DNA of 64,000 nucleotides. Source: Auanema rhodensis. Taxonomy: Eukaryota; Animalia; Nematoda. Location: contig OZ059898.1 of the NCBI GenBank assembly GCA_964057225.1, positions 9,734,001 through 9,798,000 of the forward strand, given 5' to 3'. Shown here one piece after another: positions 1 through 64,000 of this stretch (its first letter is position 1; each line of letters opens with the position of its first letter). The position numbers were made by a program, and so were the translations under genes. The notes under the pieces are model-generated. The model was not told the origin of the DNA. It was given only the letters and a program-made list of their open reading frames with translations, and searched no databases.

Positions 1-3000
1 GTTTACTTATTTGATTATAATACTTGAAATTCCAAAAACAGTAGAATAAAATTGAGAAAGCGACAAAAACAGTTGAACGATTTGAAGAGAATTGTAAGTT
101 TTAGAAAATAATTAAAAATTAGTTCTCTCTACTATTAACTGATTGTCGGCTAAAATATGGTAACAGTTTTTATAAAAAGTTTCCATGATTAGGATTAAAC
201 AAAAAAAAGAATTAAAGAGAAACACTTTTTGTTTACTTATTTGATTATAATACTTGAAATTCCAAAAACAGTAGAATAAAATTGAGAAAGCGACAAAAAC
301 AGTTGAACGATTTGAAGAGAATTGTAAGTTTTAGAAAATAATTAAAAATTAGTTCTCTCTACTATTAACTGATTGTCGGCTAAAATATGGTAACAGTTTT
401 TATAAAAAGGTTCCATGATTAGGACTAAACAAAAAAAAGAATCAAAAAGAAACACTTCTTGTTTACTTACTTGATTATAATACTTGAAATTCCAAAAACA
501 GTAAAATAAAATTGAGAAAGCGACAAAAACAGTTGAACGATTTGAAGACAATTGTAAGTTTTAGAAAAGAATTAAAGTTCAGCTATCTCTACTATTAACT
601 GACTATCGGCTAAAATAAGGTAACAGTTTTTATTGAAAGTTTCCATGATTAAGATTAAACAAAGAAAAAAATCAGAGAGAAACACTTCTTGTTTACTTAC
701 TTGATTATAATACTTGAAATGCCAACAAAAGTAAAGTAAAACTGTTAAAGCGAGTAAAACTGTTGAACAATTTGAAGACAATTGTAAGTTTAAGAAAAGA
801 ATTAAAGTTTAGCTTTGTCTACTATTAACTGAATGTCGGCTAAAATATGGTAACAGTTTTTATCAAAAGTTTCCATGATTAAGATTAAACAAAGAAAAAA
901 AATCAAAAAGAAACACTTCTTGTTTACTTACTTGATTATAATACTTGAAATTCCAAAAACAGTAGAATAAAATTGAGAAAGCGACAAAAACAGTTGAACG
1001 ATTTGAAGAGAATTGTAAGTTGAAGAAAAAATTAAAGTTTAGCTCTCTCTACTATTAACTGAATGTCGGCTAAAATATAGTAACAGTTTTTATTAAAAGT
1101 TTCCATGATTAAGATTAAACAAAGAAAAAAAATCAAAGAAAAACACTTCTTGTTTACTAATTTGATCATAACACTTGAAATGCCAACAAAAGTAAAGTAA
1201 AACTGTTAAAGCGAGTAAAACTGTTGAACAATTTGAAGACAATTGTAAGTTGAAGAAAAAAATTAAAGTTTAGCTCTCTCTACTATTAACTGAATGTCGG
1301 CTAAAATATGGTAACAGTTTTTATCAAAAGTTTCCATGATTAAGATTGAACAAAGAAAAAAAATCAAAAAGAAACACTTCTTGTTTACTTACTTGATTAT
1401 AATACTTGAAATTCCAAAAACAGTAGAATAAAATAGAGAAAACGACAAAAACAGTTGAACGATTTGAAGACAATTGTAAGTTTTAGAAAATAATTAAAAA
1501 TTAGTTCTCTCTACTATTAACTGATTGTCGGCTAAAATATGGTAACAGTTTTTATAAAAAGGTTCCATGATTAGGACTAAACAAAAAAAAGAATCAAAAA
1601 GAAACACTTCTTGTTTACTTACTTGATTATAATACTTGAAATTCAAAAAAAAGTAAAAAACAATTGAGAAAGCGACATAAACAGTTGAAAGATTTGAAGA
1701 GAATTGTAAGTTTCAGAAAAGAATTAAAGTTCAGCTATCTCTACTTTTAACTGATTAACGGCTAAAATAAGGTAACAGTTTTTATTGAAAGTTTCCGTGA
1801 TTGAGATTAAACAAAAAAAAAAATCAAAGAGAAACACTTCTTGTTTACTTACTTGATTATAATACTTGAAATTCCAAAAACAGTAGAATAAAATAGAGAA
1901 AACGACAAAAACAGTTGAACGATTTGAAGACAATTGTAAGTTTTAGAAAATAATTAAAAATTAGTTCTCTCTACTATTAACTGATTGTCGGCTAAAATAT
2001 GGTAACAGTTTTTATAAAAAGTTTCCATGATTAGGATTAAACAAAAAAAAGAATTAAAGAGAAACACTTTTTGTTTACTTATTTGATTATAATACTTGAA
2101 TTTCCAAAAACAGTAGAATAAAATTGAGAAAGCGACAAAAACAGTTGAACGATTTGAAGAGAATTGTAAGTTTTAGAAAAGAATTAAAGTTCAGCTATCT
2201 CTACTATTAACTGATTAACGGCTAAAATAAGGTAACAGTTTTTATTGAAAGTTTCCGTGATTGAGATAACACAAAGAAAAAAAAATCAAAGAGAAACACT
2301 TCCTTCTTGTTTACTTATTTGATTATAACACTTGAAATTCCAACAAAAGTAAAGTAAAACTGTTAAAGCGAGTAAAACTGTTGAACGATTTGAAGACAAT
2401 TGTAAGTTTAAGAAAAGAATTAAAGTTTAGCTTTGTCTACTATTAACTGATTATCGGCTGAAATATGGTGACAGTTTTTTTTTAAAAGTTTTCATGATTA
2501 GGATTAAACAAAAAAAAGAATCAAAAAGAAACACTTCTTGTTTACTTATTTGATTATAATACTTGAAATTCCAAAAACAGTAGAATAAAATTGAGAAAGC
2601 GACAAAAACAGTTGAACGATTTGAAGAGAATTGTAAGTTTTAGAAAATAATTAAAAATTAGTTCTCTCTACTATTAACTGATTGTCGGCTAAAATATGGT
2701 AACAGTTTTTATAAAAAGTTTCCATGATTAGGATTAAACAAAAAAAGAATTAAAGAGAAACACTTTTTGTTTACTTATTTGATTATAATACTTGAAATTC
2801 CAAAAACAGTAGAATAAAATTGAGAAAGCGACAAAAACAGTTGAACGATTTGAAGAGAATTGTAAGTTTTAGAAAAGAATTAAAGTTCAGCTTTCTCTAC
2901 TATTAACTGATTATCGGCTAAAATAAGGTAACAGTTTTTATTGAAAGTTTCCATGATTAAGATTAAACAAAAAAAAAAATCAAAGAGAAACACTTCTTGT

Positions 3001-3116
3001 TTACTAATTTGATTATAACACTTGAAAATCCAACAAAAGTAAAAAAAAAACTGTGAAAGCGGGTAAAACTGTTGAACTATAACAGTCTTTATAAAATATA
3101 AATGATATTTTTTTAT

Positions 3117-3120
3117 AAAA
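3117..3120 (-). terminator. Pol III oligo-dT terminator (T4), representative of the tRNA copies
   Basis: Minus strand reads ...GATGCA-ACTTCAC-TTTT, so TTTT begins 7 nt after the discriminator base. A second TTTT lies at 3093-3096. Confidence 0.75.
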
Positions 3121-3127
3121 GTGAAGT

Positions 3128-3198
3128 TGCATCGGCCGGGAATCGAACCCGGGTCGCCCGCGTGGCAGGCGAGCATTCTACCACTGAACCACCGATGC
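3128..3198 (-). tRNA. trnG: tRNA-Gly(GCC)
   Basis: Minus strand GCATCGGTGGTTCAGTGGTAGAATGCTCGCCTGCCACGCGGGCGACCCGGGTTCGATTCCCGGCCGATGCA: 71 nt, full cloverleaf, anticodon GCC, A and B boxes, no encoded CCA. This is the array consensus. Confidence 0.97.
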
Positions 3199-3249
3199 TT
3201 CGAAAATGTTAGATTGTTTCCGAAAAATTATGAAAAGTCAAGTTCTACT
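3199..3249 (-). promoter_or_regulatory. Conserved 51-bp 5' flank of the tRNA gene with an AT-rich block near -25 to -38 (putative TFIIIB loading region); representative copy
   Basis: Minus strand AGTAGAACTTGACTTTTCATAATTTTTCGGAAACAATCTAACATTTTCGAA directly precedes G1 and is near-invariant across copies. Function is inferred from position only. Confidence 0.4.
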
Positions 3250-8600: not shown

Positions 8601-10162
8601 CCATGATTAAGATTAAACAAGGAAAAAAAATCAAAGAAAAACACTTCTTGTTTACTAATTTGATCATAACACTTGAAATGCCAACAAAAGTAAAGTAAAA
8701 CTGTTAAAGCGAGTAAAACTGTTGAACAATTTGAAGACAATTGTAAGTTGAAGAAAAAAATTAAAGTTTAGCTCTCTCTACTATTACCTGAATGTCGGCT
8801 AAAATATGGTAACAGTTTTAATAAAAAGTTTCCATGATTAGGATTAAACAAAAAAAAGAATTAAAGAGAAACACTTTTTGTTTACTTATTTGATTATAAT
8901 ACTTGAAATTCCAAAAACAGTAAAATAAAATTGAGAAAGCGACAAAAACAGTTGAACGATTTGAAGACAATTGTAAGTTTAAGAAAAGAATTAAAGTTTA
9001 GCTTTGTCTACTATTAACTGATTATCGGCTGAAATATGGTGACAGTTTTTTTTTAAAAGTTTTCATGATTAGGATTAAACAAAAAAAAGAATCAAAAAGA
9101 AACACTTCTTGTTTACTTATTTGATTATAATACTTGAAATTTCAAAAACAGTAGAATAAAATTGAGAAAGCGACAAAAACAGTTGAACGATTTGAAGAGA
9201 ATTGTAAGTTTTAGAAAAGAATTAAAGTTTAGCTCTCTCTACTATTAACTGATTATCGGCTAAAATATAGTAACAGTTTTTATTAAAAGTTTCCATGATT
9301 AAGATTAAACAAAGAAAAAAAATCAAAGAAAAACACTTCTTGTTTACTAATTTGATCATAACACTTGAAATGCCAACAAAAGTAAAGTAAAACTGTTAAA
9401 GCGAGTAAAACTGTTGAACAATTTGAAGACAATTGTAAGTTGAAGAAAAAAATTAAAGTTTAGCTCTCTCTACTATTAACTGAATGTCGGCTAAAATATG
9501 GTAACAGTTTTTATCAAAAGTTTCCATGATTAAGATTAAACAAAGAAAAAAAATCAAAAAGAAACACTTCTTGTTTACTTACTTGATTATAATACTTGAA
9601 ATTCCAAAAACAGTAGAATAAAATAGAGAAAACGACAAAAACAGTTGAACGATTTGAAGACAATTGTAAGTTTTAGAAAATAATTAAAAATTAGTTCTCT
9701 CTACTATTAACTGATTGTCGGCTAAAATATGGTAACAGTTTTTATAAAAAGGTTCCATGATTAGGACTAAACAAAAAAAAGAATCAAAAAGAAACACTTC
9801 TTGTTTACTTACTTGATTATAATACTTGAAATTCAAAAAAAAGTAAAAAACAATTGAGAAAGCGACATAAACAGTTGAACGATTTGAAGAGAATTGTAAG
9901 TTTCAGAAAAGAATTAAAGTTCAGCTATCTCTACTTTTAACTGATTAACGGCTAAAATAAGGTAACAGTTTTTATTGAAAGTTTCCGTGATTGAGATTAA
10001 ACAAAGAAAAAAAAATCAAAGAGAAACACTTCTTGTTTACTTATTTGATTATAACACTTGAAAATCCAACAAAAGTAAAATAAAACTGTGAAAGCGGGTA
10101 AAACTGTTGAACTAAAACAGTCTTTATAAAATATAAATGATATATTTTTATAAAAGTGAAGT

Positions 10163-10233
10163 TGCATCGGCCGGGAATCGAACCCGGGTCACCCGCGTGG
10201 CAGGCGAGCATTCTACCACTGAACCACCGATGC
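10163..10233 (-). tRNA. trnG: tRNA-Gly(GCC), C44U variable-loop variant
   Basis: Consensus except gtcAccc (10191); all stems intact. Confidence 0.95.
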
Positions 10234-11261
10234 TTCGAAAATGTTAGATTGTTTCCGAAAAATTATGAAAAGTCAAGTTCTACTGATTTGAAGAGAATTG
10301 TAAGTTTTAGAAAATAATTAAAAATTAGTTCTCTCTACTATTAACTGATTAACGGCTAAAATAAGGTAACAGTTTTTATTGAAAGTTTCCGTGATTGAGA
10401 TAACACAAAGAAAAAAAAATCAAAGAGAAACACTTCCTTCTTGTTTACTTATTTGATTATAACACTTGAAATTCCAACAAAAGTAAAGTAAAACTGTTAA
10501 AGCGAGTAAAACTGTTGAACGATTTGAAGAGAATTGTAAGTTTTAGAAAAGAATTAAAGTTTAGCTTTGTCTACTATTAACTGATTATCGGCTGAAATAT
10601 GGTGACAGTTTTTTTTTAAAAGTTTTCATGATTAGGATTAAACAAAAAAAAGAATCAAAAAGAAACACTTCTTGTTTACTTATTTGATTATAATACTTGA
10701 AATTCCAAAAACAGTAGAATAAAATTGAGAAAGCGACAAAAACAGTTGAACGATTTGAAGAGAATTGTAAGTTTTAGAAAATAATTAAAAATTAGTTCTC
10801 TCTACTACTAACTGATTGTCGGCTAAAATATGGTAACAGTTTTTATAAAAAGTTTCCATGATTAGGATTAAACAAAAAAAGAATTAAAGAGAAACACTTT
10901 TTGTTTACTTATTTGATTATAATACTTGAAATTCCAAAAACAGTAGAATAAAATTGAGAAAGCGACAAAAACAGTTGAACGATTTGAAGAGAATTGTAAG
11001 TTTTAGAAAAGAATTAAAGTTCAGCTTTCTCTACTATTAACTGATTATCGGCTAAAATAAGGTAACAGTTTTTATTGAAAGTTTCCATGATTAAGATTAA
11101 ACAAAGAAAAAAATCAAAGAGAAACACTTCTTGTTTACTAATTTGATTATAACACTTGAAAATCCAACAAAAGTAAAAAAAAAACTGTGAAAGCGGGTAA
11201 AACTGTTGAACTATAACAGTCTTTATAAAATATAAATGATATTTTTTTATAAAAGTGAAGT

Positions 11262-11332
11262 TGCATCGGCCGGGAATCGAACCCGGGTCGCCCGCGTGGC
11301 AGGCGAGCATTCTACCACTGAACCACCGATGC
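11262..11332 (-). tRNA. trnG: tRNA-Gly(GCC)
   Basis: Identical to consensus. Confidence 0.97.
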
Positions 11333-11895
11333 TTCGAAAATGTTAGATTGTTTCCGAAAAATTATGAAAAGTCAAGTTCTACTGATTTGAAGAGAATTGT
11401 AAGTTTTAGAAAATAATTAAAAATTAGTTCTCTCTACTATTAACTGATTGTCGGCTAAAATATGGTAACAGTTTTTATAAAAAGGTTCCATGATTAGGAC
11501 TAAACAAAAAAAAGAATCAAAAAGAAACACTTCTTGTTTACTTACTTGATTATAATACTTGAAATTCAAAAAAAAGTAAAAAACAATTGAGAAAGCGACA
11601 TAAACAGTTGAACGATTTGAAGAGAATTGTAAGTTTCAGAAAAGAATTAAAGTTCAGCTATCTCTACTTTTAACTGATTAACGGCTAAAATAAGGTAACA
11701 GTTTTTATTGAAAGTTTCCGTGATTGAGATTAAACAAAGAAAAAAAAATCAAAGAGAAACACTTCTTGTTTACTTATTTGATTATAACACTTGAAAATCC
11801 AACAAAAGTAAAATAAAACTGTGAAAGCGGGTAAAACTGTTGAACTAAAACAGTCTTTATAAAATATAAATGATATATTTTTATAAAAGTGAAGT

Positions 11896-11966
11896 TGCAT
11901 CGGCCGGGAATCGAACCCGGGTCACCCGCGTGGCAGGCGAGCATTCTACCACTGAACCACCGATGC
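11896..11966 (-). tRNA. trnG: tRNA-Gly(GCC), C44U variant
   Basis: Consensus except gtcAccc. Confidence 0.95.
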
Positions 11967-12994
11967 TTCGAAAATGTTAGATTGTTTCCGAAAAATTATG
12001 AAAAGTCAAGTTCTACTGATTTGAAGAGAATTGTAAGTTTTAGAAAATAATTAAAAATTAGTTCTCTCTACTATTAACTGATTAACGGCTAAAATAAGGT
12101 AACAGTTTTTATTGAAAGTTTCCGTGATTGAGATAACACAAAGAAAAAAAAATCAAAGAGAAACACTTCCTTCTTGTTTACTTATTTGATTATAACACTT
12201 GAAATTCCAACAAAAGTAAAGTAAAACTGTTAAAGCGAGTAAAACTGTTGAACGATTTGAAGAGAATTGTAAGTTTTAGAAAAGAATTAAAGTTTAGCTT
12301 TGTCTACTATTAACTGATTATCGGCTGAAATATGGTGACAGTTTTTTTTTAAAAGTTTTCATGATTAGGATTAAACAAAAAAAAGAATCAAAAAGAAACA
12401 CTTCTTGTTTACTTATTTGATTATAATACTTGAAATTCCAAAAACAGTAGAATAAAATTGAGAAAGCGACAAAAACAGTTGAACGATTTGAAGAGAATTG
12501 TAAGTTTTAGAAAATAATTAAAAATTAGTTCTCTCTACTACTAACTGATTGTCGGCTAAAATATGGTAACAGTTTTTATAAAAAGTTTCCATGATTAGGA
12601 TTAAACAAAAAAAGAATTAAAGAGAAACACTTTTTGTTTACTTATTTGATTATAATACTTGAAATTCCAAAAACAGTAGAATAAAATTGAGAAAGCGACA
12701 AAAACAGTTGAACGATTTGAAGAGAATTGTAAGTTTTAGAAAAGAATTAAAGTTCAGCTTTCTCTACTATTAACTGATTATCGGCTAAAATAAGGTAACA
12801 GTTTTTATTGAAAGTTTCCATGATTAAGATTAAACAAAGAAAAAAATCAAAGAGAAACACTTCTTGTTTACTAATTTGATTATAACACTTGAAAATCCAA
12901 CAAAAGTAAAAAAAAAACTGTGAAAGCGGGTAAAACTGTTGAACTATAACAGTCTTTATAAAATATAAATGATATTTTTTTATAAAAGTGAAGT

Positions 12995-13065
12995 TGCATC
13001 GGCCGGGAATCGAACCCGGGTCGCCCGCGTGGCAGGCGAGCATTCTACCACTGAACCACCGATGC
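12995..13065 (-). tRNA. trnG: tRNA-Gly(GCC)
   Basis: Identical to consensus. Confidence 0.97.
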
Positions 13066-13629
13066 TTCGAAAATGTTAGATTGTTTCCGAAAAATTATGA
13101 AAAGTCAAGTTCTACTGATTTGAAGAGAATTGTAAGTTTTAGAAAATAATTAAAAATTAGTTCTCTCTACTATTAACTGATTGTCGGCTAAAATATGGTA
13201 ACAGTTTTAATAAAAAGTTTCCATGATTAGGATTAAACAAAAAAAAAGAATTAAAGAGAAACACTTTTTGTTTACTTACTTGATTATAATACTTGAAATT
13301 CAAAAAAAAGTAAAAAACAATTGAGAAAGCGACATAAACAGTTGAACGATTTGAAGAGAATTGTAAGTTTCAGAAAAGAATTAAAGTTCAGCTATCTCTA
13401 CTTTTAACTGATTAACGGCTAAAATAAGGTAACAGTTTTTATTGAAAGTTTCCGTGATTGAGATTAAACAAAGAAAAAAAAATCAAAGAGAAACACTTCT
13501 TGTTTACTTATTTGATTATAACACTTGAAAATCCAACAAAAGTAAAATAAAACTGTGAAAGCGGGTAAAACTGTTGAACTAAAACAGTCTTTATAAAATA
13601 TAAATGATATATTTTTATAAAAGTGAAGT

Positions 13630-13700
13630 TGCATCGGCCGGGAATCGAACCCGGGTCGCCCGCGTGGCAGGCGAGCATTCTACCACTGAACCACCGATGC
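13630..13700 (-). tRNA. trnG: tRNA-Gly(GCC)
   Basis: Identical to consensus. Confidence 0.97.
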
Positions 13701-14958
13701 TTCGAAAATGTTAGATTGTTTCCGAAAAATTATGAAAAGTCAAGTTCTACTGATTTGAAGAGAATTGTAAGTTTTAGAAAATAATTAAAAATTAGTTCTC
13801 TCTACTATTTACTGATTGTCAGCTATAATATGGTAACAGTTTTTATAAAAAGTTTCCATGATTAGGATTAAACAAAAAAAAGAATTAAAGAGAAACACTT
13901 TTTGTTTACTTATTTGATTATAATACTTGAATTTCCAAAAACAGTAGAATAAAATTGAGAAAGCGACAAAAACAGTTGAACGATTTGAAGAGAATTGTAA
14001 GTTTTAGAAAAGAATTAAAGTTCAGCTATCTCTACTATTAACTGATTAACGGCTAAAATAAGGTAACAGTTTTTATTGAAAGTTTCCGTGATTGAGATAA
14101 CACAAAGAAAAAAAAATCAAAGAGAAACACTTCCTTCTTGTTTACTTATTTGATTATAACACTTGAAATTCCAACAAAAGTAAAGTAAAACTGTTAAAGC
14201 GAGTAAAACTGTTGAACGATTTGAAGAGAATTGTAAGTTTTAGAAAAGAATTAAAGTTTAGCTTTGTCTACTATTAACTGATTATCGGCTGAAATATGGT
14301 GACAGTTTTTTTTTAAAAGTTTTCATGATTAGGATTAAACAAAAAAAAGAATCAAAAAGAAACACTTCTTGTTTACTTATTTGATTATAATACTTGAAAT
14401 TCCAAAAACAGTAGAATAAAATTGAGAAAGCGACAAAAACAGTTGAACGATTTGAAGAGAATTGTAAGTTTTAGAAAATAATTAAAAATTAGTTCTCTCT
14501 ACTATTAACTGATTGTCGGCTAAAATATGGTAACAGTTTTTATAAAAAGTTTCCATGATTAGGATTAAACAAAAAAAGAATTAAAGAGAAACACTTTTTG
14601 TTTACTTATTTGATTATAATACTTGAAATTCCAAAAACAGTAGAATAAAATTGAGAAAGCGACAAAAACAGTTGAACGATTTGAAGAGAATTGTAAGTTT
14701 TAGAAAAGAATTAAAGTTCAGCTTTCTCTACTATTAACTGATTATCGGCTAAAATAAGGTAACAGTTTTTATTGAAAGTTTCCATGATTAAGATTAAACA
14801 AAGAAAAAAATCAAAGAGAAACACTTCTTGTTTACTAATTTGATTATAACACTTGAAAATCCAACAAAAGTAAAAAAAAAACTGTGAAAGCGGGTAAAAC
14901 TGTTGAACTATAACAGTCTTTATAAAATATAAATGATATTTTTTTATAAAAGTGAAGT

Positions 14959-15029
14959 TGCATCGGCCGGGAATCGAACCCGGGTCGCCCGCGTGGCAGG
15001 CGAGCATTCTACCACTGAACCACCGATGC
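14959..15029 (-). tRNA. trnG: tRNA-Gly(GCC)
   Basis: Identical to consensus. Confidence 0.97.
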
Positions 15030-15593
15030 TTCGAAAATGTTAGATTGTTTCCGAAAAATTATGAAAAGTCAAGTTCTACTGATTTGAAGAGAATTGTAAG
15101 TTTTAGAAAATAATTAAAAATTAGTTCTCTCTACTATTAACTGATTGTCGGCTAAAATATGGTAACAGTTTTAATAAAAAGTTTCCATGATTAGGATTAA
15201 ACAAAAAAAAAGAATTAAAGAGAAACACTTTTTGTTTACTTACTTGATTATAATACTTGAAATTCAAAAAAAAGTAAAAAACAATTGAGAAAGCGACATA
15301 AACAGTTGAACGATTTGAAGAGAATTGTAAGTTTCAGAAAAGAATTAAAGTTCAGCTATCTCTACTTTTAACTGATTAACGGCTAAAATAAGGTAACAGT
15401 TTTTATTGAAAGTTTCCGTGATTGAGATTAAACAAAGAAAAAAAAATCAAAGAGAAACACTTCTTGTTTACTTATTTGATTATAACACTTGAAAATCCAA
15501 CAAAAGTAAAATAAAACTGTGAAAGCGGGTAAAACTGTTGAACTAAAACAGTCTTTATAAAATATAAATGATATATTTTTATAAAAGTGAAGT

Positions 15594-15664
15594 TGCATCG
15601 GCCGGGAATCGAACCCGGGTCGCCCGCGTGGCAGGCGAGCATTCTACCACTGAACCACCGATGC
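15594..15664 (-). tRNA. trnG: tRNA-Gly(GCC)
   Basis: Identical to consensus. Confidence 0.97.
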
Positions 15665-16922
15665 TTCGAAAATGTTAGATTGTTTCCGAAAAATTATGAA
15701 AAGTCAAGTTCTACTGATTTGAAGAGAATTGTAAGTTTTAGAAAATAATTAAAAATTAGTTCTCTCTACTATTTACTGATTGTCAGCTATAATATGGTAA
15801 CAGTTTTTATAAAAAGTTTCCATGATTAGGATTAAACAAAAAAAAGAATTAAAGAGAAACACTTTTTGTTTACTTATTTGATTATAATACTTGAATTTCC
15901 AAAAACAGTAGAATAAAATTGAGAAAGCGACAAAAACAGTTGAACGATTTGAAGAGAATTGTAAGTTTTAGAAAAGAATTAAAGTTCAGCTATCTCTACT
16001 ATTAACTGATTAACGGCTAAAATAAGGTAACAGTTTTTATTGAAAGTTTCCGTGATTGAGATAACACAAAGAAAAAAAAATCAAAGAGAAACACTTCCTT
16101 CTTGTTTACTTATTTGATTATAACACTTGAAATTCCAACAAAAGTAAAGTAAAACTGTTAAAGCGAGTAAAACTGTTGAACGATTTGAAGACAATTGTAA
16201 GTTTAAGAAAAGAATTAAAGTTTAGCTTTGTCTACTATTAACTGATTATCGGCTGAAATATGGTGACAGTTTTTTTTTAAAAGTTTTCATGATTAGGATT
16301 AAACAAAAAAAAGAATCAAAAAGAAACACTTCTTGTTTACTTATTTGATTATAATACTTGAAATTCCAAAAACAGTAGAATAAAATTGAGAAAGCGACAA
16401 AAACAGTTGAACGATTTGAAGAGAATTGTAAGTTTTAGAAAATAATTAAAAATTAGTTCTCTCTACTATTAACTGATTGTCGGCTAAAATATGGTAACAG
16501 TTTTTATAAAAAGTTTCCATGATTAGGATTAAACAAAAAAAGAATTAAAGAGAAACACTTTTTGTTTACTTATTTGATTATAATACTTGAAATTCCAAAA
16601 ACAGTAGAATAAAATTGAGAAAGCGACAAAAACAGTTGAACGATTTGAAGAGAATTGTAAGTTTTAGAAAAGAATTAAAGTTCAGCTTTCTCTACTATTA
16701 ACTGATTATCGGCTAAAATAAGGTAACAGTTTTTATTGAAAGTTTCCATGATTAAGATTAAACAAAGAAAAAAATCAAAGAGAAACACTTCTTGTTTACT
16801 AATTTGATTATAACACTTGAAAATCCAACAAAAGTAAAAAAAAAACTGTGAAAGCGGGTAAAACTGTTGAACTATAACAGTCTTTATAAAATATAAATGA
16901 TATTTTTTTATAAAAGTGAAGT

Positions 16923-46300: not shown

Positions 46301-47321
46301 ATGCCAACAAAAGTAAAGTAAAACTGTTAAAGCGAGTAAAACTGTTGAACAATTTGAAGACAATTGTAAGTTGAAGAAAAAAATTAAAGTTTAGCTCTCT
46401 CTACTATTAACTGAATGTCGGCTAAAATATGGTAACAGTTTTTATCAAAAGTTTCCATGATTAAGATTAAACAAAGAAAAAAAATCAAAAAGAAACACTT
46501 CTTGTTTACTTACTTGATTATAATACTTGAAATTCCAAAAACAGTAGAATAAAATAGAGAAAACGACAAAAACAGTTGAACGATTTGAAGACAATTGTAA
46601 GTTTTAGAAAATAATTAAAAATTAGTTCTCTCTACTATTAACTGATTGTCGGCTAAAATATGGTAACAGTTTTCATAAAAAGGTTCCATGATTAGGACTA
46701 AACAAAAAAAAATCAAAAAGAAACACTTCTTGTTCACTTACTTGATTATAATACTTGAAATTCAAAAAAAAGTAAAAAACAATTGAGAAAGCGACATAAA
46801 CAGTTGAACGATTTGAAGAGAATTGTAAGTTTCAGAAAAGAATTAAAGTTCAGCTATCTCTACTTTTAACTGATTACCGGCTAAAATAAGGTAACAGTTT
46901 TTATTGAAAGTTTCCGTGATTGAGATTAAACAAAGAAAAAAAAATCAAAGAGAAACAGTTCTTGTTTACTTATTTGATTATAACACTTGAAATTCCAACA
47001 AAAGTAAAGTAAAACTGTTAAAGCGAGTAAAACTGTTGAACGATTTGAAGACAATTGTAAGTTGAAGAAAAAAATTAAAGTTCAGCTATCTCTACTTTCA
47101 ACTGATTAACGGCTAAAATATAGTAACAGTTTTTATTAAAAGTTTCCATGATTAAGATTAAACAAAGAAAAAAATCAAAGAGAAACACTTCTTGTATACT
47201 AATTTGATTATAACACTTGAAAATCCAACAAAAGTAAAATAAAACTGTGAAAGCGGGTAAAACTGTTGAACTAAAACAGTCTTTATAAAATATAAATGAT
47301 ATATTTTTATAAAAGTGAAGT

Positions 47322-55611: not shown

Positions 55612-56189
55612 TTCGAAAATGTTAGATTGTTTCCGAAAAATTATGAAAAGTCAAGTTCTACTGATTTGAAGAGAATTGTAAGTTTTAGAAAAGAATTAAA
55701 GTTCAGCTATCTCTACTATTAACTGATTATCGGCTAAAATAAGGTAACAGTTTTTATTGAAAGTTTCCATGATTAAGATTAAACAAAGAAAAAGAATCAA
55801 AGAGAAACACTTCTTGTTTACTTATTTGATTATAATACTTGAAATTCCAAAAACAGTAGAATAAAATAGAGAAAGCGACGAAAAAAGTTGAACGATTTGA
55901 AGAGAATTGTAAGTTTTAGAGAAGAATTAAAGTTCAGCTATCTCTACTATTAACTGATTGTCGGCTAAAATAAGGTAACAGTTTTTATTGAAAGTTTCCA
56001 TGATTAAGATTAAACAAAGAAAAAAATCAAAGAGAAACACTTCTTGTTTACTTACTTGATTATAATACTTGAAATTCCGAAAACAGTAGAATAAAATCAA
56101 GAAAGCGACAAAAACAGTTGAACGATTAGAAGACGATTGTAAGTTTTAGAAAATAATAAAAGTTTAGCTATCTCTACTATTAACTGATT

Positions 56190-56317
56190 ATCAGCTAAAA
56201 TAAGGTAACAGTTTTTATTAAAGCGAGTAAAACTGTTGAACGATTTGAAGACAATCGGCTAAAATAAGGTAACAGTTTTTATTAAAGCGAGTAAAACTGT
56301 TGAACGATTTGAAGAAA
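56190..56317. repeat. 64-bp tandem duplication formed from an internally deleted monomer
   Basis: ATC(A/G)GCTAAAATAAGGTAACAGTTTTTATTAAAGCGAGTAAAACTGTTGAACGATTTGAAGA(C/A)A occurs twice in tandem. Confidence 0.88.
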
Positions 56318-56819
56318 ATTGTAAGTTCTAGAAAATAATTAAAAATAAGTTCTCTCTACTATTAACTGATTGTCGGCTAAATTATGGTAACAGTTTTTAT
56401 GAAAAGTTTCCATGATTAGGATTAAACAAAGAAAAAAGAATCAAAGAGAAACACTTCTTGTTTACTTATTTGATTATAATACTTGAAATTCCGAAAACAG
56501 TAGAATAAAATGAAGAAAGCGACAAAAACAGTTGAACGATTTGAAGACAATTGTAAGTTGAAGAAAAAAATTAAAGTTTAGCTCTCTCTACTATTTAATG
56601 ATTGTCGGCTAGAATATGGTAACAGTTTTTATTAAAAGTTTCCATGTTTAAGATTGAACAAAGAAAAAAAAATCCAAGAGAAACACTTCTTGTTTACTAA
56701 TTTGATTATAACACTTGAAAATCCAACAAAAGTAAAATAAAACTGTAAAAGCAAGTAAAACTGTTGAAATAAAACAGTTTTTATTAAATATAAATGATAT
56801 TTTTTTATAAAAATGAAGT

Positions 56820-56890
56820 TGCATCGGCCGGGAATCGAACCCGGGTCGCCCGCGTGGCAGGCGAGCATTCTACCACTGATCCACCGATGC
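56820..56890 (-). tRNA. trnG: tRNA-Gly(GCC), U11A variant with diverged 3' flank
   Basis: ccactgaTccacc; T5 rather than T4 downstream. Confidence 0.88.
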
Positions 56891-58147
56891 TTCGAAAATG
56901 TTAGATTGTTTCCGAAAAATTATGAAAAGTCAAGTTCTACTGATTTGAAGAGAATTGTAAGTTTTAGAAAAGAATTAAAGTTCAGCTATCTCTACTATTA
57001 ACTGATTATCGGCTAAAATAAGGTAACAGTTTTTATTGAAAGTTTCCATGATTAAGATTAAACAAAGAAAAAGAATCAAAGAGAAACACTTCTTGTTTAC
57101 TTATTTGATTATAATACTTGAAATTCCAAAAACAGTAGAATAAAATAGAGAAAGCGACGAAAAAAGTTGAACGATTTGAAGAGAATTGTAAGTTTTAGAG
57201 AAGAATTAAAGTTCAGCTATCTCTACTATTAACTGATTGTCGGCTAAAATAAGGTAACAGTTTTTATTGAAAGTTTCCATGATTAAGATTAAACAAAGAA
57301 AAAAATCAAAGAGAAACACTTCTTGTTTACTTACTTGATTATAATACTTGAAATTCCAAAAACAGTAAAATAAAATTGAAAAAGCGACAAAAACAGTTGA
57401 ACGATTTGAAGACAATTGTAAGTTGAAGAATAAAATTAAAGTTTAGCTCTCTCTACTATTAACTGAATGTCGGCTAAAATATGGTAACAGTTTTTATTAA
57501 AAGTTTCCATGATTAAGATTAAACAAAGAAAAAAAATCAAAGAGAAACACTTCTTGTTTACTTATTTGATTATAATACTTGAAATTCCAAAAACAGTAGA
57601 ATAAAATAGAGAAAGAGACGAAAAAAGTTGAACGATTTGAAGAGAATTGTAAGTTTTAGAGAAGAATTAAAGTTTAGCTTTGTCTACTATTTAATGATTA
57701 TCGGCTGAAATATGGTGACAGTTTTTTTTTAAAAGTTTCCATGATTAAGATTAATCAAAGAAAAAAAAATCAAAGAGAAACACTTCTTGTTTACTAATTT
57801 GATTATAACACTTGAAATTCCAACAAAAGTAAAGTAAAACTGTTAAAGCGAGTAAAACTGTTGAACAATTTGAAGACAATTGTAAGTTGAAGAATAAAAT
57901 TAAAGTTTAGCTCTCTCTACTATTAACTGAATGTCGGCTAAAATATGGTAACAGTTTTTATTAAAAGTTTCCATGATTAAGATTAAACAAAGAAAAAAAA
58001 TCAAAGAGAAACACTCCTTGTTTACTAATTTGATTATAACACTTGAAATTCCAACAAAAGTAAAATAAAACTGTGAAAGCGGGTAAAACTGTTGAACTAA
58101 AACAGTCTTTATAAAATATAAATGATATTTTTTTATAAAAGTGAAGT

Positions 58148-58218
58148 TGCATCGGCCGGGAATCGAACCCGGGTCGCCCGCGTGGCAGGCGAGCATTCTA
58201 CCACTGAACCACCGATGC
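58148..58218 (-). tRNA. trnG: tRNA-Gly(GCC)
   Basis: Identical to consensus. Confidence 0.97.
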
Positions 58219-59240
58219 TTCGAAAATGTTAGATTGTTTCCGAAAAATTATGAAAAGTCAAGTTCTACTGATTTGAAGAAAATTGTAAGTTTTAGAAAAT
58301 AATTAAAAATAAGTTCTCTCTACTATTAACTGATTGTCGGCTAAAATATGGTAACAGTTTTTATAAAAAGTTTCCATGATTAGGATTAAACAAAAAAAAG
58401 AATTAAAGAGAAACACTTTTTGTTTACTTATTTGATTATAATACTTGAAATTCCAAAAACAGTAGAATAAAATTGAGAAATCGACAAAAACAGTTGAACG
58501 ATTTGAAGAGAATTGTAAGTTTTAGAAAAGAATTAAAGTTCAGCTATCTCTACTATTAACTGACTATCGGCTAGAATAAGGTAACAGTTTTTATTGAAAG
58601 TTTCCATGATTAAGATTAAACAAAAAAAAAATCAGAGAGAAACACTTCTTGTTTACTTACTTGATTATAATACTTGAAATTCCAAAAACAGTAAAATAAA
58701 ATTGAGAAAGCGACAAAAACAGTTGAACGATTTGAAGACAATTGTAAGTTTAAGAAAAGAATTAAAGTTTAGCTTTGTCTACTATTAACTGATTATCGGC
58801 TGAAATATGGTGACAGTTTTTTTTTAAAAGTTTTCATGATTAGGATTAAACAAAAAAAAGAATCAAAAAGAAACACTTCTTGTTTACTTATTTGATTATA
58901 ACACTTGAAATTCCAACAAAAGTAAAGTAAAACTGTTAAAGCGAGTAAAACTGTTGAACGATTTGAAGACAATTGTAAGTTGAAGAAAAAAATTAAAGTT
59001 TAGCTCTCTCTACTATTAACTGAATGTCGGCTAAAATATGGTAACAGTTTTTATTAAAAGTTTCCATGATTAAGATTAAACAAAGAAAAAAAATCAAAGA
59101 GAAACACTCCTTGTTTACTAATTTGATTATAACACTTGAAATTCCAACAAAAGTAAAATAAAACTGTGAAAGCGGGTAAAACTGTTGAACTAAAACAGTC
59201 TTTATAAAATATAAATGATATTTTTTTATAAAAGTGAAGT

Positions 59241-59311
59241 TGCATCGGCCGGGAATCGAACCCGGGTCGCCCGCGTGGCAGGCGAGCATTCTACCACTGA
59301 ACCACCGATGC
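59241..59311 (-). tRNA. trnG: tRNA-Gly(GCC)
   Basis: Identical to consensus. Confidence 0.97.
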
Positions 59312-60580
59312 TTCGAAAATGTTAGATTGTTTCCGAAAAATTATGAAAAGTCAAGTTCTACTGATTTGAAGAGAATTGTAAGTTTTAGAAAAGAATTAAA
59401 GTTCAGCTATCTCTACTATTAACTGATTATCGGCTAAAATAAGGTAACAGTTTTTATTGAAAGTTTCCATGATTAAGATTAAACAAAGAAAAAGAATCAA
59501 AGAGAAACACTTCTTGTTTACTTATTTGATTATAATACTTGAAATTCCAAAAACAGTAGAATAAAATAGAGAAAGCGACGAAAAAAGTTGAACAATTTGA
59601 AGAGAATTGTAAGTTTTAGAGAAGAATTAAAGTTCAGCTATCTCTACTATTAACTGATTGTCGGCTAAAATAAGGTAACAGTTTTTATTGAAAGTTTCCA
59701 TGATTAAGATTAAACAAAGAAAAAAATCAAAGAGAAACACTTCTTGTTTACTTACTTGATTATAATACTTGAAATTCCAAAAACAGTAAAATAAAATTGA
59801 AAAAGCGACAAAAACAGTTGAACGATTTGAAGACAATTGTAAGTTGAAGAATAAAATTAAAGTTTAGCTCTCTCTACTATTAACTGAATGTCGGCTAAAA
59901 TATGGTAACAGTTTTTATTAAAAGTTTCCATGATTAAGATTAAACAAAGAAAAAAAATCAAAGAGAAACACTTCTTGTTTACTTATTTGATTATAATACT
60001 TGAAATTCCAAAAACAGTAGAATAAAATAGAGAAAGAGACGAAAAAAGTTGAACGATTTGAAGAGAATTGTAAGTTTTAGAAAAGAATTAAAGTTTAGCT
60101 TTGTCTACTATTTAATGATTATCGGCTGAAATATGGTGACAGTTTTTATTGAAAGTTCCATGATTAAGATTAAACAAAAAAAAAATCAGAGAGAAACACT
60201 TCTTGTTTATTTATTTGATTATAATACTTGAAATTCCAAGAACAGTAGAATAAAATAGAGAAAGCGACGAAAAAAGTTGAACGATTTGAAGAGAATTGTA
60301 AGTTTTAGAAAAGAATTACAGTTCAGCTATCTCTACTATTAACTGATTATCAGCTAAAATAAGGTAACAGTTTTTATTAAAAGTTTCCATGTTTAAGATT
60401 GAACAAAAAAAAAAAAATCCAAGAGAAACACTTCTTGTTTACTAATTTGATTATAATACTTGAAATTCCGAAAACAGTAGAATAAAATCAAGAAAGCGAC
60501 AAAAACAGTTGAACGATTAGAAGACGATTGTAAGTTTTAGAAAATAATAAAAGTTTAGCTATCTCTACTATTAACTGATT

Positions 60581-60708
60581 ATCAGCTAAAATAAGGTAAC
60601 AGTTTTTATTAAAGCGAGTAAAACTGTTGAACGATTTGAAGACAATCGGCTAAAATAAGGTAACAGTTTTTATTAAAGCGAGTAAAACTGTTGAACGATT
60701 TGAAGAAA
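60581..60708. repeat. Second occurrence of the 64-bp tandem duplication
   Basis: Same sequence as 56190-56317. Confidence 0.88.
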
Positions 60709-61210
60709 ATTGTAAGTTCTAGAAAATAATTAAAAATAAGTTCTCTCTACTATTAACTGATTGTCGGCTAAATTATGGTAACAGTTTTTATGAAAAGTTT
60801 CCATGATTAGGATTAAACAAAGAAAAAAGAATCAAAGAGAAACACTTCTTGTTTACTTATTTGATTATAATACTTGAAATTCCGAAAACAGTAGAATAAA
60901 ATGAAGAAAGCGACAAAAACAGTTGAACGATTTGAAGACAATTGTAAGTTGAAGAAAAAAATTAAAGTTTAGCTCTCTCTACTATTTAATGATTGTCGGC
61001 TAGAATATGGTAACAGTTTTTATTAAAAGTTTCCATGTTTAAGATTGAACAAAGAAAAAAAAATCCAAGAGAAACACTTCTTGTTTACTAATTTGATTAT
61101 AACACTTGAAAATCCAACAAAAGTAAAATAAAACTGTAAAAGCAAGTAAAACTGTTGAAATAAAACAGTTTTTATTAAATATAAATGATATTTTTTTATA
61201 AAAATGAAGT

Positions 61211-61281
61211 TGCATCGGCCGGGAATCGAACCCGGGTCGCCCGCGTGGCAGGCGAGCATTCTACCACTGATCCACCGATGC
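61211..61281 (-). tRNA. trnG: tRNA-Gly(GCC), U11A variant with diverged 3' flank
   Basis: Copy of the 56820 locus, 4391 bp downstream. Confidence 0.88.
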
Positions 61282-62538
61282 TTCGAAAATGTTAGATTGT
61301 TTCCGAAAAATTATGAAAAGTCAAGTTCTACTGATTTGAAGAGAATTGTAAGTTTTAGAAAAGAATTAAAGTTCAGCTATCTCTACTATTAACTGATTAT
61401 CGGCTAAAATAAGGTAACAGTTTTTATTGAAAGTTTCCATGATTAAGATTAAACAAAGAAAAAGAATCAAAGAGAAACACTTCTTGTTTACTTATTTGAT
61501 TATAATACTTGAAATTCCAAAAACAGTAGAATAAAATAGAGAAAGCGACGAAAAAAGTTGAACGATTTGAAGAGAATTGTAAGTTTTAGAGAAGAATTAA
61601 AGTTCAGCTATCTCTACTATTAACTGATTGTCGGCTAAAATAAGGTAACAGTTTTTATTGAAAGTTTCCATGATTAAGATTAAACAAAGAAAAAAATCAA
61701 AGAGAAACACTTCTTGTTTACTTACTTGATTATAATACTTGAAATTCCAAAAACAGTAAAATAAAATTGAAAAAGCGACAAAAACAGTTGAACGATTTGA
61801 AGACAATTGTAAGTTGAAGAATAAAATTAAAGTTTAGCTCTCTCTACTATTAACTGAATGTCGGCTAAAATATGGTAACAGTTTTTATTAAAAGTTTCCA
61901 TGATTAAGATTAAACAAAGAAAAAAAATCAAAGAGAAACACTTCTTGTTTACTTATTTGATTATAATACTTGAAATTCCAAAAACAGTAGAATAAAATAG
62001 AGAAAGAGACGAAAAAAGTTGAACGATTTGAAGAGAATTGTAAGTTTTAGAAAAGAATTAAAGTTTAGCTTTGTCTACTATTTAATGATTATCGGCTGAA
62101 ATATGGTGACAGTTTTTTTTTAAAAGTTTCCATGATTAAGATTAATCAAAGAAAAAAAAATCAAAGAGAAACACTTCTTGTTTACTAATTTGATTATAAC
62201 ACTTGAAATTCCAACAAAAGTAAAGTAAAACTGTTAAAGCGAGTAAAACTGTTGAACAATTTGAAGACAATTGTAAGTTGAAGAATAAAATTAAAGTTTA
62301 GCTCTCTCTACTATTAACTGAATGTCGGCTAAAATATGGTAACAGTTTTTATTAAAAGTTTCCATGATTAAGATTAAACAAAGAAAAAAAATCAAAGAGA
62401 AACACTCCTTGTTTACTAATTTGATTATAACACTTGAAATTCCAACAAAAGTAAAATAAAACTGTGAAAGCGGGTAAAACTGTTGAACTAAAACAGTCTT
62501 TATAAAATATAAATGATATTTTTTTATAAAAGTGAAGT

Positions 62539-62609
62539 TGCATCGGCCGGGAATCGAACCCGGGTTGCCCGCGTGGCAGGCGAGCATTCTACCACTGAAC
62601 CACCGATGC
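62539..62609 (-). tRNA. trnG: tRNA-Gly(GCC), G45A variable-loop variant
   Basis: cgggtTgccc at 62566; stems intact. Confidence 0.93.
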
Positions 62610-63631
62610 TTCGAAAATGTTAGATTGTTTCCGAAAAATTATGAAAAGTCAAGTTCTACTGATTTGAAGAAAATTGTAAGTTTTAGAAAATAATTAAAAA
62701 TAAGTTCTCTCTACTATTAACTGATTGTCGGCTAAAATATGGTAACAGTTTTTATAAAAAGTTTCCATGATTAGGATTAAACAAAAAAAAGAATTAAAGA
62801 GAAACACTTTTTGTTTACTTATTTGATTATAATACTTGAAATTCCAAAAACAGTAGAATAAAATTGAGAAATCGACAAAAACAGTTGAACGATTTGAAGA
62901 GAATTGTAAGTTTTAGAAAAGAATTAAAGTTCAGCTATCTCTACTATTAACTGACTATCGGCTAGAATAAGGTAACAGTTTTTATTGAAAGTTTCCATGA
63001 TTAAGATTAAACAAAAAAAAAATCAGAGAGAAACACTTCTTGTTTACTTAATTGATTATAATACTTGAAATTCCAAAAACAGTAAAATAAAATTGAGAAA
63101 GCGACAAAAACAGTTGAACGATTTGAAGACAATTGTAAGTTTAAGAAAAGAATTAAAGTTTAGCTTTGTCTACTATTAACTGATTATCGGCTGAAATATG
63201 GTGACAGTTTTTTTTTAAAAGTTTTCATGATTAGGATTAAACAAAAAAAAGAATCAAAAAGAAACACTTCTTGTTTACTTATTTGATTATAACACTTGAA
63301 ATTCCAACAAAAGTAAAGTAAAACTGTTAAAGCGAGTAAAACTGTTGAACGATTTGAAGACAATTGTAAGTTGAAGAAAAAAATTAAAGTTTAGCTCTCT
63401 CTACTATTAACTGAATGTCGGCTAAAATATGGTAACAGTTTTTATTAAAAGTTTCCATGATTAAGATTAAACAAAGAAAAAAAATCAAAGAGAAACACTC
63501 CTTGTTTACTAATTTGATTATAACACTTGAAATTCCAACAAAAGTAAAATAAAACTGTGAAAGCGGGTAAAACTGTTGAACTAAAACAGTCTTTATAAAA
63601 TATAAATGATATTTTTTTATAAAAGTGAAGT

Positions 63632-63702
63632 TGCATCGGCCGGGAATCGAACCCGGGTCGCCCGCGTGGCAGGCGAGCATTCTACCACTGAACCACCGAT
63701 GC
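63632..63702 (-). tRNA. trnG: tRNA-Gly(GCC)
   Basis: Identical to consensus. Confidence 0.97.
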
Positions 63703-64000
63703 TTCGAAAATGTTAGATTGTTTCCGAAAAATTATGAAAAGTCAAGTTCTACTGATTTGAAGAGAATTGTAAGTTTTAGAAAAGAATTAAAGTTCAGCTA
63801 TCTCTACTATTAACTGATTATCGGCTAAAATAAGGTAACAGTTTTTATTGAAAGTTTCCATGATTAAGATTAAACAAAGAAAAAGAATCAAAGAGAAACA
63901 CTTCTTGTTTACTTATTTGATTATAATACTTGAAATTCCAAAAACAGTAGAATAAAATAGAGAAAGCGACGAAAAAAGTTGAACAATTTGAAGAGAATTG

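What the first reader, a model, noticed from the sequence alone, without database searches (positions are those of the whole stretch)
1..64000. Satellite-tRNA hybrid array: a 231-bp satellite carrying 41 co-oriented tRNA-Gly(GCC) loci as an optional module
Seen: this is neither a plain satellite nor a plain tandem tRNA array. About 1 in 6 monomers holds the gene, always at the same site and strand, at irregular spacings of 634 to ~4550 bp that are mostly n x 231 + 172. Of 41 loci, 38 are full length and 28 are identical, while the surrounding monomers differ at many positions. Established: tRNA genes and TFIIIC sites act as heterochromatin barriers at S. pombe centromeres, and Entamoeba has tRNA-plus-short-tandem-repeat arrays. 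Inference: this could be a structural locus (centromeric, pericentromeric or subtelomeric) patterned by Pol III/TFIIIC sites, or a tRNA-dosage amplifier whose copy number changes with satellite turnover. I cannot tell from sequence alone whether it is already described.
Basis: partly seen in the sequence, partly recalled or inferred. Interest (0 to 1): 0.8.

Follow-up and report, generated by a model that had tools for sequence, protein, structure and literature searches.

The report
Glycine tRNA genes inside satellite DNA
A roundworm's 231-base satellite repeat carries a complete glycine-tRNA gene in about every seventh unit; the genes look intact but seem to have been multiplied passively along with the repeat, and this is one of many such arrays in a genome where they were already reported in outline.

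Summary
The window holds 245 full 231-bp monomers and 41 co-oriented 172-bp cassettes, each carrying tRNA-Gly(GCC). Of these, 38 are intact, 28 are identical, and 3 share a 25-nt deletion that removes the B box. Spacing is n x 231 + 172 bp.

The cassette has a single origin. Every cassette is followed by a private monomer 5' end that no gene-less unit has, and cassette haplotypes form a clean tree tied to the downstream monomer type. It multiplied with the satellite as higher-order blocks (periods 1733, 1964, 2194 and 4391 bp; block copies 99.2-99.5% identical).

The tRNA body varies as much as its flanks, and in young duplicates as much as the monomers. There is no flank mutation excess and no sign of homogenisation. 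About 8 of 41 copies look impaired.

The centromere or barrier reading has no support. Whether the cassette was inserted, or the satellite grew from a tRNA array's spacer, stays open.

The scan has already noted this same array in other windows of this chromosome piece, and arrays for at least nine other tRNA types in this genome. A 2026 preprint on the probable species (Auanema rhodense) reported tRNA arrays in outline. Interest is moderate to low.

The parts
1..64000 (-). Continuous tandem array of 245 full 231-bp monomers plus 41 tRNA-Gly cassettes. It runs off both ends of the window.
   Evidence: TRF and HMM decomposition. GC is 26-28% with constant strand skew.
3078..3249 (-). Representative 172-bp cassette: 5' flank 3199-3249 (51 nt), tRNA-Gly(GCC) 3128-3198 (71 nt), 3' flank 3078-3127 (50 nt) with a T4 Pol III terminator 8 nt after the gene.
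   Evidence: Cloverleaf and A/B boxes.
24660..24806 (-). 147-bp cassette with a 25-nt internal deletion that removes the variable loop and T arm (B box). It is a pseudogene. Identical copies lie at 25727-25873 and 47272-47418.
   Evidence: Not called by ARAGORN or Rfam.
31557..43500 (-). Higher-order repeat of period 2194 bp, built as cassette + 5 monomers + cassette + 3 monomers (type string [t]JAGKA[t]FED). It carries two tRNA genes per unit.
9768..17250 (-). Higher-order repeats of period 1733 and 1964 bp ([t]JAGK[t]FE and [t]JAGKA[t]FE). They belong to 3.5-5.1 kb blocks duplicated at 99.3-99.5% identity, up to about position 24400.
56110..64000 (-). Two copies of a 4391-bp block (99.2% identical) carrying three cassettes each. 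One of the three is the most diverged cassette lineage, with 4 private flank variants, a 173rd base, and the D-stem mismatch T11A.
43356..47271 (-). Longest gene-free run in this part of the array: 17 consecutive monomers without a cassette. No Rfam match at E <= 1.
56124..56319 (-). Partial monomers with a 64-bp internal duplication. The same structure recurs at 60515-60710.

Best explanation
This is a tandem-repeat locus in which one variant of a 231-bp satellite unit carries a complete tRNA-Gly(GCC) gene with 51 bp of upstream and 50 bp of downstream flank. That gene-bearing unit arose once. Unequal crossing-over and segmental duplication then copied blocks of monomers with their cassettes into higher-order repeats. 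Crossovers inside monomers reshuffled the sequence further from the cassette. This produced irregular spacing that is always a whole number of monomers. The same layout can be described as a tRNA gene array whose spacer is a variable number (2-19) of 231-bp subrepeats. Most copies keep what RNA polymerase III needs (A box, B box, T4 terminator), so they may be transcribed. Their number, however, is a by-product of satellite dynamics and not the result of selection on each copy. Shown here: anatomy, single origin, block duplication, recombination mosaics, and equal variation in gene, flanks and monomers. Inferred: the crossing-over mechanism and the passenger status. Not shown: expression, chromosomal fate, and whether the cassette entered a satellite or the satellite grew from the gene's spacer.
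For: Single origin: all 41 monomers directly after a cassette carry a private 5' end, and none of about 200 monomers that follow a monomer has it. Junctions are fixed to the base. Linkage decay: diversity is 0.013 in the cassette, 0.02-0.03 in the first 60 nt downstream, and rises to 0.08-0.10 at the far end. Monomer types are mosaics that share halves. Block duplication: periods of 1733, 1964, 2194 and 4391 bp, and 3.5-5.1 kb blocks at 99.2-99.5% identity. Cassette haplotypes form a tree with no four-gamete violation and are tied to the downstream monomer type. No per-copy selection: mutation events per site are 0.099 in the tRNA and 0.108 in the flanks. In 23 young pairs, differences are 38/21262 in monomers, 4/2323 in flanks and 4/1633 in the tRNA. 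In same-genealogy groups, events per column are 2/284 in the tRNA against 27/3241 in monomers. Three of six substitution types break a stem, with no compensating change, and 3 copies lack the B box, so about 8 of 41 look impaired. The copy was made at the DNA level: the cassette includes 51 nt upstream of the mature 5' end and 38 nt beyond the terminator, with no poly-A and no target-site duplication. Context: the genome has many tandem tRNA arrays. The probable species has 19,554 tRNA loci.
Against: 28 of 38 intact copies are identical and all 38 score well above the Rfam threshold, so a useful, expressed gene set is not excluded. The counts in the rate tests are small (1-4 events), so weak selection would go unseen. 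In older comparisons the cassette differs far less than the neighbouring monomers (4/890 against 203/5547). I attribute this to swapped monomer contexts, but gene conversion or selection acting on the whole cassette cannot be strictly ruled out. No read-level, expression or chromatin data could be obtained.
Confidence: 0.6

Rival explanations
1. Selected dosage reservoir. The array exists because the animal, most plausibly its germline or oocytes, needs a very large supply of tRNA-Gly(GCC). Satellite-style amplification is the means, as with the oocyte-type 5S and tDNA arrays of Xenopus. If the array lies in DNA that is eliminated from body cells, it would be a physically germline-limited gene set.
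For: 38 of 41 copies are intact with A box, B box and terminator. [quoted passage not shown] The same array recurs 680 and 742 kb away, so the copy number may be in the hundreds (notes not checked).
Against: There is no depletion of changes in the gene body relative to flanks or monomers. About 20% of copies are impaired. The flank mutation excess that marks heavily transcribed tRNA genes in other nematodes (PMC13010820) is absent: 1 event in 404 flank columns, and a two-fold excess is rejected at p = 0.009. Arrays exist for many isotypes in this genome, which suggests a general amplification process and not a glycine-specific need.
Confidence: 0.2
2. Origin rival; it concerns history, not present function, and it is compatible with the best explanation. 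The ancestral unit was a 403-bp tRNA-Gly repeat. The 231-bp satellite is its spacer, freed of the gene by one unequal exchange or deletion and then over-amplified. Earlier agents concluded this for the tRNA-Arg arrays of this genome.
For: The same filled/empty layout at a similar ratio was read as gene loss in the tRNA-Arg arrays, and the tRNA-Trp array has variable 60-bp spacer repeats (notes not checked). There is no target-site duplication or other insertion scar. The last 17 nt of the cassette resemble an internal monomer segment, 16 of 17 matches, shuffle p about 0.03.
Against: Gene-less monomers keep no remnant of the cassette, unlike the Arg case. Cassette-linked monomers nest with type 2 monomers: unique states are 11 for type 1, 2 for type 2 and 2 for the cassette-linked class. 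A single loss ancestral to all gene-less units is therefore not clock-like (p = 0.022). It needs a second exchange through the shared monomer start. Gene-less monomers are far more diverse than anything linked to the cassette.
Confidence: 0.45
3. Structural locus. The tRNA genes serve as TFIIIC/Pol III binding sites that pattern chromatin as barriers, as condensin or cohesin loading sites, or as marks for elimination, as tRNA genes do at fission-yeast centromeres.
For: There are 38 strict B boxes in one orientation across 64 kb. tRNA genes are known barrier elements in yeasts, and the human 1q23.3 tRNA repeat was proposed as a boundary (PMC4041453).
Against: Spacing is irregular (634-4557 bp) and fully explained by block duplication. 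The genes are scattered through the array and not at an edge. There are no B-box-like sites in the monomers. Copies without a B box persist and were duplicated three times. Nematodes are holocentric (my own knowledge), so the centromere analogy does not transfer.
Confidence: 0.08
4. Mobile cassette. The 172-bp unit is a site-specific mobile element that inserted repeatedly at one position of the monomer.
For: The same site and strand are used 41 times, and the monomer types upstream differ (5 types). This genome does have satellite-targeting LINE and DIRS elements (notes not checked).
Against: Every cassette drags the same private downstream haplotype with it. Cassette haplotypes are tied to the downstream monomer type. 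There are no terminal repeats, target-site duplication, poly-A or coding capacity. The boundaries exceed any Pol III transcript.
Confidence: 0.03
5. Assembly artefact. The array, or its copy number and order, was created by mis-assembly of repeats.
For: Long tandem repeats are error-prone in assemblies, and no reads could be laid.
Against: The satellite's words are present in 11 DNA runs from 3 studies. Monomers differ by about 10%, and blocks carry private variants in a consistent nested pattern, which a collapse or expansion artefact would not create. The preprint reports that most long reads map uniquely in such repeats.
Confidence: 0.03

Closest known systems
Tandem tRNA, 5S and U2 arrays in the germline-restricted DNA of Auanema rhodense (bioRxiv 10.64898/2026.08.27.747507)
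   Same: Probably the same genome. That paper reports 19,554 tRNA loci, tandem repeats with units of 167-504 bp, and 'several tRNA loci' arranged as tandem blocks, with RNA-gene density below 20% per 10 kb. Here tRNA occupancy is about 4.5%.
   Different: The text held here does not describe the 231-bp/172-bp architecture, the single origin or the evolutionary tests, and its tables are images. The four FISH probes it prints do not match this satellite. Species identity and elimination status of this window are therefore inferred and not shown.
Other tRNA arrays noted by this scan in the same genome: tRNA-Arg filled (607 bp) and empty (410 bp) units, and tRNA-Trp genes with variable 60-bp spacer repeats
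   Same: Gene-bearing and gene-less units are mixed at about 1:5-6, or genes are separated by a variable number of spacer subrepeats. All copies are co-oriented.
   Different: In the Arg arrays the empty units keep a stub of the gene, which proves deletion. Here the empty units keep nothing of the cassette, so polarity is open. In several other arrays the gene was said to be more conserved than the spacer. Here it is not.
Entamoeba tRNA gene arrays with short tandem repeats between genes (PMC2652664)
   Same: tRNA genes in long tandem arrays with repetitive, length-variable spacers. The function of the arrangement is unknown, and a structural role has been proposed.
   Different: In Entamoeba every unit holds 1-5 genes, almost all tRNA genes of the genome are in arrays, and the spacers are microsatellite-like. 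Here only about 1 unit in 7 holds a gene, and the spacer is a 231-bp satellite with its own higher-order repeats.
Plant tDNA clusters: the Arabidopsis Ser/Tyr cluster in heterochromatin (PMC12308677) and the tRNA-Cys 0.4-kb repeats (PMC10701932)
   Same: Tandemly repeated tRNA genes in repeat-rich chromatin. Copy number varies, and most copies are silent in most tissues.
   Different: Every unit there carries genes, there is no gene-less satellite partner, and expression data exist there but not here.
Xenopus oocyte-type 5S rRNA and tDNA arrays, and satellites derived from rDNA spacers (my own knowledge; the spacer-to-satellite route is also mentioned notes)
   Same: Pol III genes amplified in tandem with AT-rich, internally repetitive spacers. 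Spacer subrepeats expand and contract by unequal exchange.
   Different: In Xenopus the amplification is tied to a shown oocyte-specific demand. No such link is shown here, and the sequence tests argue against strong per-copy constraint.
Human tRNA variable-number tandem repeat at 1q23.3 (PMC4041453)
   Same: A copy-number-variable tandem repeat that carries tRNA genes. It was proposed as a boundary element.
   Different: Its units are 7.3 kb, GC-rich and bind CTCF, with 9-43 units per allele. It is not a short AT-rich satellite.

Membership tests
Eukaryotic nuclear tRNA gene (Pol III type 2 promoter) | Cloverleaf fold with an anticodon, detected by tRNA models | tested here: met
   ARAGORN finds 38 genes with anticodon GCC. 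Rfam RF00005 scores them 57-68 bits against a threshold of 29. The cloverleaf energy is -26.5 kcal/mol.
Eukaryotic nuclear tRNA gene (Pol III type 2 promoter) | Internal A box and B box, plus a downstream T-run terminator | tested here: met
   The B box matches the strict consensus in 38 cassettes. An A-box-like segment is present. A T4 run lies 8 nt after the gene. Three copies lack the B box.
Eukaryotic nuclear tRNA gene (Pol III type 2 promoter) | Transcription and processing into mature tRNA | not testable with these tools
Active tRNA gene as judged by its evolutionary signature (flank mutation excess, gene body depleted) | Flanks more variable than neutral DNA, and the gene body less variable than its flanks (PMC13010820) | tested here: not met
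   In same-genealogy groups, events per column are 1/404 in flanks, 2/284 in the tRNA and 27/3241 in monomers. A two-fold flank excess is rejected at p = 0.009, and events per site are 0.099 in the tRNA against 0.108 in the flanks. Counts are small.
Satellite DNA with higher-order repeats | Long head-to-tail array of a short non-coding monomer | tested here: met
   245 full monomers of 229-233 bp over 64 kb. There are no Rfam hits and no real ORFs.
Satellite DNA with higher-order repeats | Multi-monomer blocks much more alike than neighbouring monomers | tested here: met
   Blocks are 99.2-99.5% identical, against about 89.5% between monomers.
Classical tandem tRNA gene array (every unit carries the gene) | One or more genes in every repeat unit | tested here: not met
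   41 cassettes per 286 units. Gene-free runs reach 19 monomers.
tRNA-derived SINE or retroposed tRNA copy | Boundaries equal to a Pol III transcript, an A-rich or LINE-derived tail, and a target-site duplication | tested here: not met
   The cassette has 51 nt upstream of the mature 5' end and 38 nt beyond the terminator. There is no tail and no duplication at the junctions.
tDNA/TFIIIC chromatin barrier (fission-yeast centromere type) | tRNA genes placed at the border between two chromatin domains | tested here: inconclusive
   The genes are scattered through the whole window and no array edge lies in it. Chromatin state cannot be tested.
Germline-restricted (eliminated) ncRNA arrays of Auanema rhodense | The window belongs to that species and lies between elimination break sites | not testable with these tools
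   Species names of the runs are coded. The four published probes do not match. Other agents' notes name the species and place a candidate break motif 6.7 Mb away. There is no coverage data.

The most novel reading that the evidence does not exclude
The array is part of a germline-only set of Pol III genes. It would lie in DNA that the worm cuts out of all body cells, so that hundreds of tRNA-Gly genes (and the arrays of other isotypes) serve only the germline or early embryo, or so that their TFIIIC sites help organise chromatin destined for elimination. That would make programmed DNA elimination a way of switching a whole tRNA gene set off by removing it.
Probability: 0.12. Interest if true: 0.75.

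Novelty: new member of a known kind. Interest (0 to 1): 0.35.

Why it matters
The array gives a clean, base-level example of how a functional-looking gene can be carried to high copy number by satellite dynamics alone. It also shows that 'many identical copies among divergent repeats' can come from single origin plus recombination, without selection. If the array proves to be germline-restricted and transcribed, it would bear on why this nematode keeps about 19,500 tRNA loci and on what eliminated DNA does. The natural variants (a D-stem mismatch lineage, a variable-loop lineage and a B-box deletion lineage) are ready-made barcodes for asking which array copies are expressed.

Tried and rejected
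1. A fuzzy regex for the gene timed out, and a loose anchor motif gave spurious unit boundaries. An nhmmer decomposition replaced both.
After that, no letters of that stretch were sent to any search tool. For that reason the tRNA was not compared with other species, and the short ORFs that overlap it were not searched.
3. Two metagenome scans, one with a conserved monomer 21-mer and one with a 24-mer of the cassette's 5' flank, found nothing.
4. The four FISH probes of the A. rhodense preprint do not match the window even with 6 mismatches, and there are no telomere repeats.
5. The preprint's supplementary tables are not held as text.
6. I rejected a mobile, site-specific cassette and a retroposed copy.
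7. I considered gene conversion among cassettes as the cause of their uniformity. No four-gamete violation was found, and variants follow block duplication.
8. Cassette-to-monomer homology: none for the 5' flank, and only a weak 17-nt match for the 3' flank.
9. The relative-rate test does not settle insertion against deletion once later exchange through the shared monomer start is allowed.
10. The bacterial promoter and terminator scan is at chance level and irrelevant to a eukaryote.

Full report
**What is there.** The whole 64-kb window is one AT-rich tandem array with 26-28% GC and constant strand skew. TRF reports periods of 229-231 bp and 460-461 bp throughout. ARAGORN finds 38 tRNA-Gly(GCC) genes, all on the minus strand. 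Rfam finds the same 38 at 57-68 bits and nothing else. A BLAST of the gene against the window adds three truncated loci, giving 41; 28 of them are identical.

**Decomposition.** An nhmmer decomposition was phased at the cassette site. It gives 245 full monomers, five partial pieces and 41 blocks between monomers: 36 of 172 bp, 2 of 173 bp and 3 of 147 bp. Each block has 51 nt of 5' flank, the 71-nt gene, and 50 nt of 3' flank with a T4 run 8 nt after the gene. The three 147-bp blocks share a 25-nt deletion that removes the variable loop and T arm. Spacings are 634-4557 bp and equal n x 231 + 172 with n = 2-19. The few non-integer cases come from the short cassettes and two partial monomers.

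**Single origin.** Every monomer that directly follows a cassette has a private 5' end. None of about 200 monomers that follow another monomer has it. Diversity is lowest in the cassette (0.013). It stays low for about 60 nt downstream (0.02-0.03) and rises to 0.08-0.10 at the far end of that monomer. All monomers together have 0.095. The 19 monomer types are plain mosaics that share halves in different combinations. Cassette variants form a tree with no four-gamete violation, and each cassette haplogroup is tied to one downstream monomer type. One gene-bearing unit therefore arose once. Recombination inside monomers has since replaced the more distant flanks.

**How it multiplied.** The array is built of higher-order blocks. 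Examples are cassette + 5 monomers + cassette + 3 monomers (2194 bp, positions 31557-43500), shorter relatives of 1733 and 1964 bp (9768-17250), and a 4391-bp block (56110-64000). Blocks of 3.5-5.1 kb are duplicated at 99.2-99.5% identity. All shared tRNA variants are explained by these block duplications. The cassette extends 51 nt upstream of the mature 5' end and well beyond the terminator. It has no tail and no target-site duplication, so it was copied as DNA and not through RNA.

**Is the tRNA protected?** It is not, as far as the window can show.
- Mutation events per site are 0.099 in the gene (six substitutions and one deletion) and 0.108 in its flanks.
- In 23 young pairs of cassettes whose four neighbouring monomers differ by under 1%, differences are 38/21262 in monomers, 4/2323 in flanks and 4/1633 in the gene.
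- In groups of segments with the same monomer string, events per column are 1/404 in flanks, 2/284 in the gene and 27/3241 in monomers.
- Three of the six substitution types break a stem pair, with no compensating change. With the three B-box deletions, about 8 of 41 copies look impaired.
- In older comparisons the monomers differ far more than the cassette (203/5547 against 4/890). Those monomers are of different types, so this is context swapping and not slower change.

**Mutation signature of active genes.** Active tRNA genes in other nematodes show a strong excess of mutations in the flanks and a depleted gene body (PMC13010820). Neither is seen here, and a two-fold flank excess is rejected at p = 0.009. 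The counts are small, so weak effects remain possible.

**Insertion or loss?** Gene-less monomers fall into two classes that tend to alternate, which gives the 461-bp period. Fixed site patterns give 11 states unique to type 1, 2 unique to type 2, and 2 unique to the cassette-linked class. The cassette-linked unit is thus a close relative of type 2. A single loss ancestral to all gene-less units fits a clock poorly (p = 0.022). A loss followed by a later exchange through the identical first seven bases of the monomer fits as well as an insertion into a type 2 monomer. The junctions show no microhomology, duplication or gene stub. The 3' end of the cassette weakly resembles an internal monomer segment, 16 of 17 matches, p about 0.03. 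I leave polarity open, at roughly even odds.

**Context.** Earlier notes of this scan show that the genome is a nematode with programmed DNA elimination. They record tandem arrays for tRNA-Arg, Phe, Ala, Trp, Lys, Pro and Asp. They also record this same Gly/231-bp array in the preceding window and 680 kb and 742 kb further along the same piece. A BEL retroelement that uses tRNA-Gly as primer sits in the array about 6 kb beyond the window. These notes are unchecked leads.

**The preprint.** A preprint on Auanema rhodense reports 19,554 tRNA loci and elimination of 61% of the genome. It reports tandem repeats of 167-504 bp and tandem blocks of 5S, 'several tRNA loci' and U2 among germline-restricted repeats. 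Its four printed probes do not match this satellite and its tables are not readable here. The species, and whether this array is eliminated, therefore remain inferred.

**Outside support and limits.** The satellite's words occur in 11 DNA runs of 3 studies under three coded organism labels. This argues against an artefact at the sequence level. Two metagenome scans with monomer and 5'-flank words were blank.

**Other checks.** The monomer has no Rfam match at E <= 1. It has no strict or loose B-box-like site on either strand. Its only ORFs are short, periodic and mechanical.

**Verdict.** The best reading is a single-origin tRNA-Gly unit co-amplified passively with a 231-bp satellite by unequal exchange. 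Equivalently, it is a tRNA array whose spacer holds a variable number of 231-bp subrepeats. The centromere or barrier idea has no support. The closest precedents are the tRNA arrays already outlined for the probable species, the other arrays of this genome, the Entamoeba tRNA arrays (PMC2652664), plant tDNA clusters (PMC12308677, PMC10701932) and the human 1q23.3 tRNA repeat (PMC4041453). I rate it a new member of a known kind, of moderate to low interest. The open, more interesting possibility is a germline-only tRNA gene set removed from body cells.

Noticed in passing
window 56124-56319 and 60515-60710: Inside the 4391-bp duplicated block, two partial monomers form a 64-bp internal tandem duplication (TRF period 64, 96% match). 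It is a small rearrangement scar that was copied together with the block.
   Followed up: partly
window 3078-3096, the 3' end of each cassette, against monomer positions 131-148: The last 17 nt of the cassette match an internal segment of the monomer at 16 of 17 positions (shuffle p about 0.03). This could be a relic of shared ancestry between cassette flank and monomer, or chance in AT-rich DNA.
   Followed up: partly
window 55491-55662, 56769-56941, 61160-61332: The most diverged cassette lineage. All three copies carry a D-stem mismatch in the tRNA and have the lowest Rfam scores (57.4 bits). Two of them also carry 4 private 3'-flank changes, an extra 173rd base, and a different downstream monomer start.
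   Followed up: yes
window, e.g. 2880-3176 (-), 33290-33541 (-): There are 26 periodic ORFs of 83-98 aa. Each starts inside a cassette and runs into the next monomer. They look mechanical.
   Followed up: no
about 6-7 kb beyond the window's end (notes s1-397802, s1-397673): A BEL/Pao LTR retroelement whose primer-binding site matches tRNA-Gly(GCC) is reported inserted in this same array, 62 bp upstream of a tRNA gene. This may be targeting of Pol III genes by an element that uses their product as primer.
   Followed up: no
whole window: The satellite's 31-mers are held by runs under three different coded organism labels, at shares of 0.77 to 0.34. The repeat family is therefore shared by several strains or close species. 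Comparing them could date the cassette.
   Followed up: no
window, K-type monomers (13 copies, e.g. in the [t]JAGKA blocks): One monomer type carries a private 5-nt insertion near position 82 and is found almost only as the fourth monomer of the JAGKA block. It is a handy marker of that higher-order repeat.
   Followed up: no
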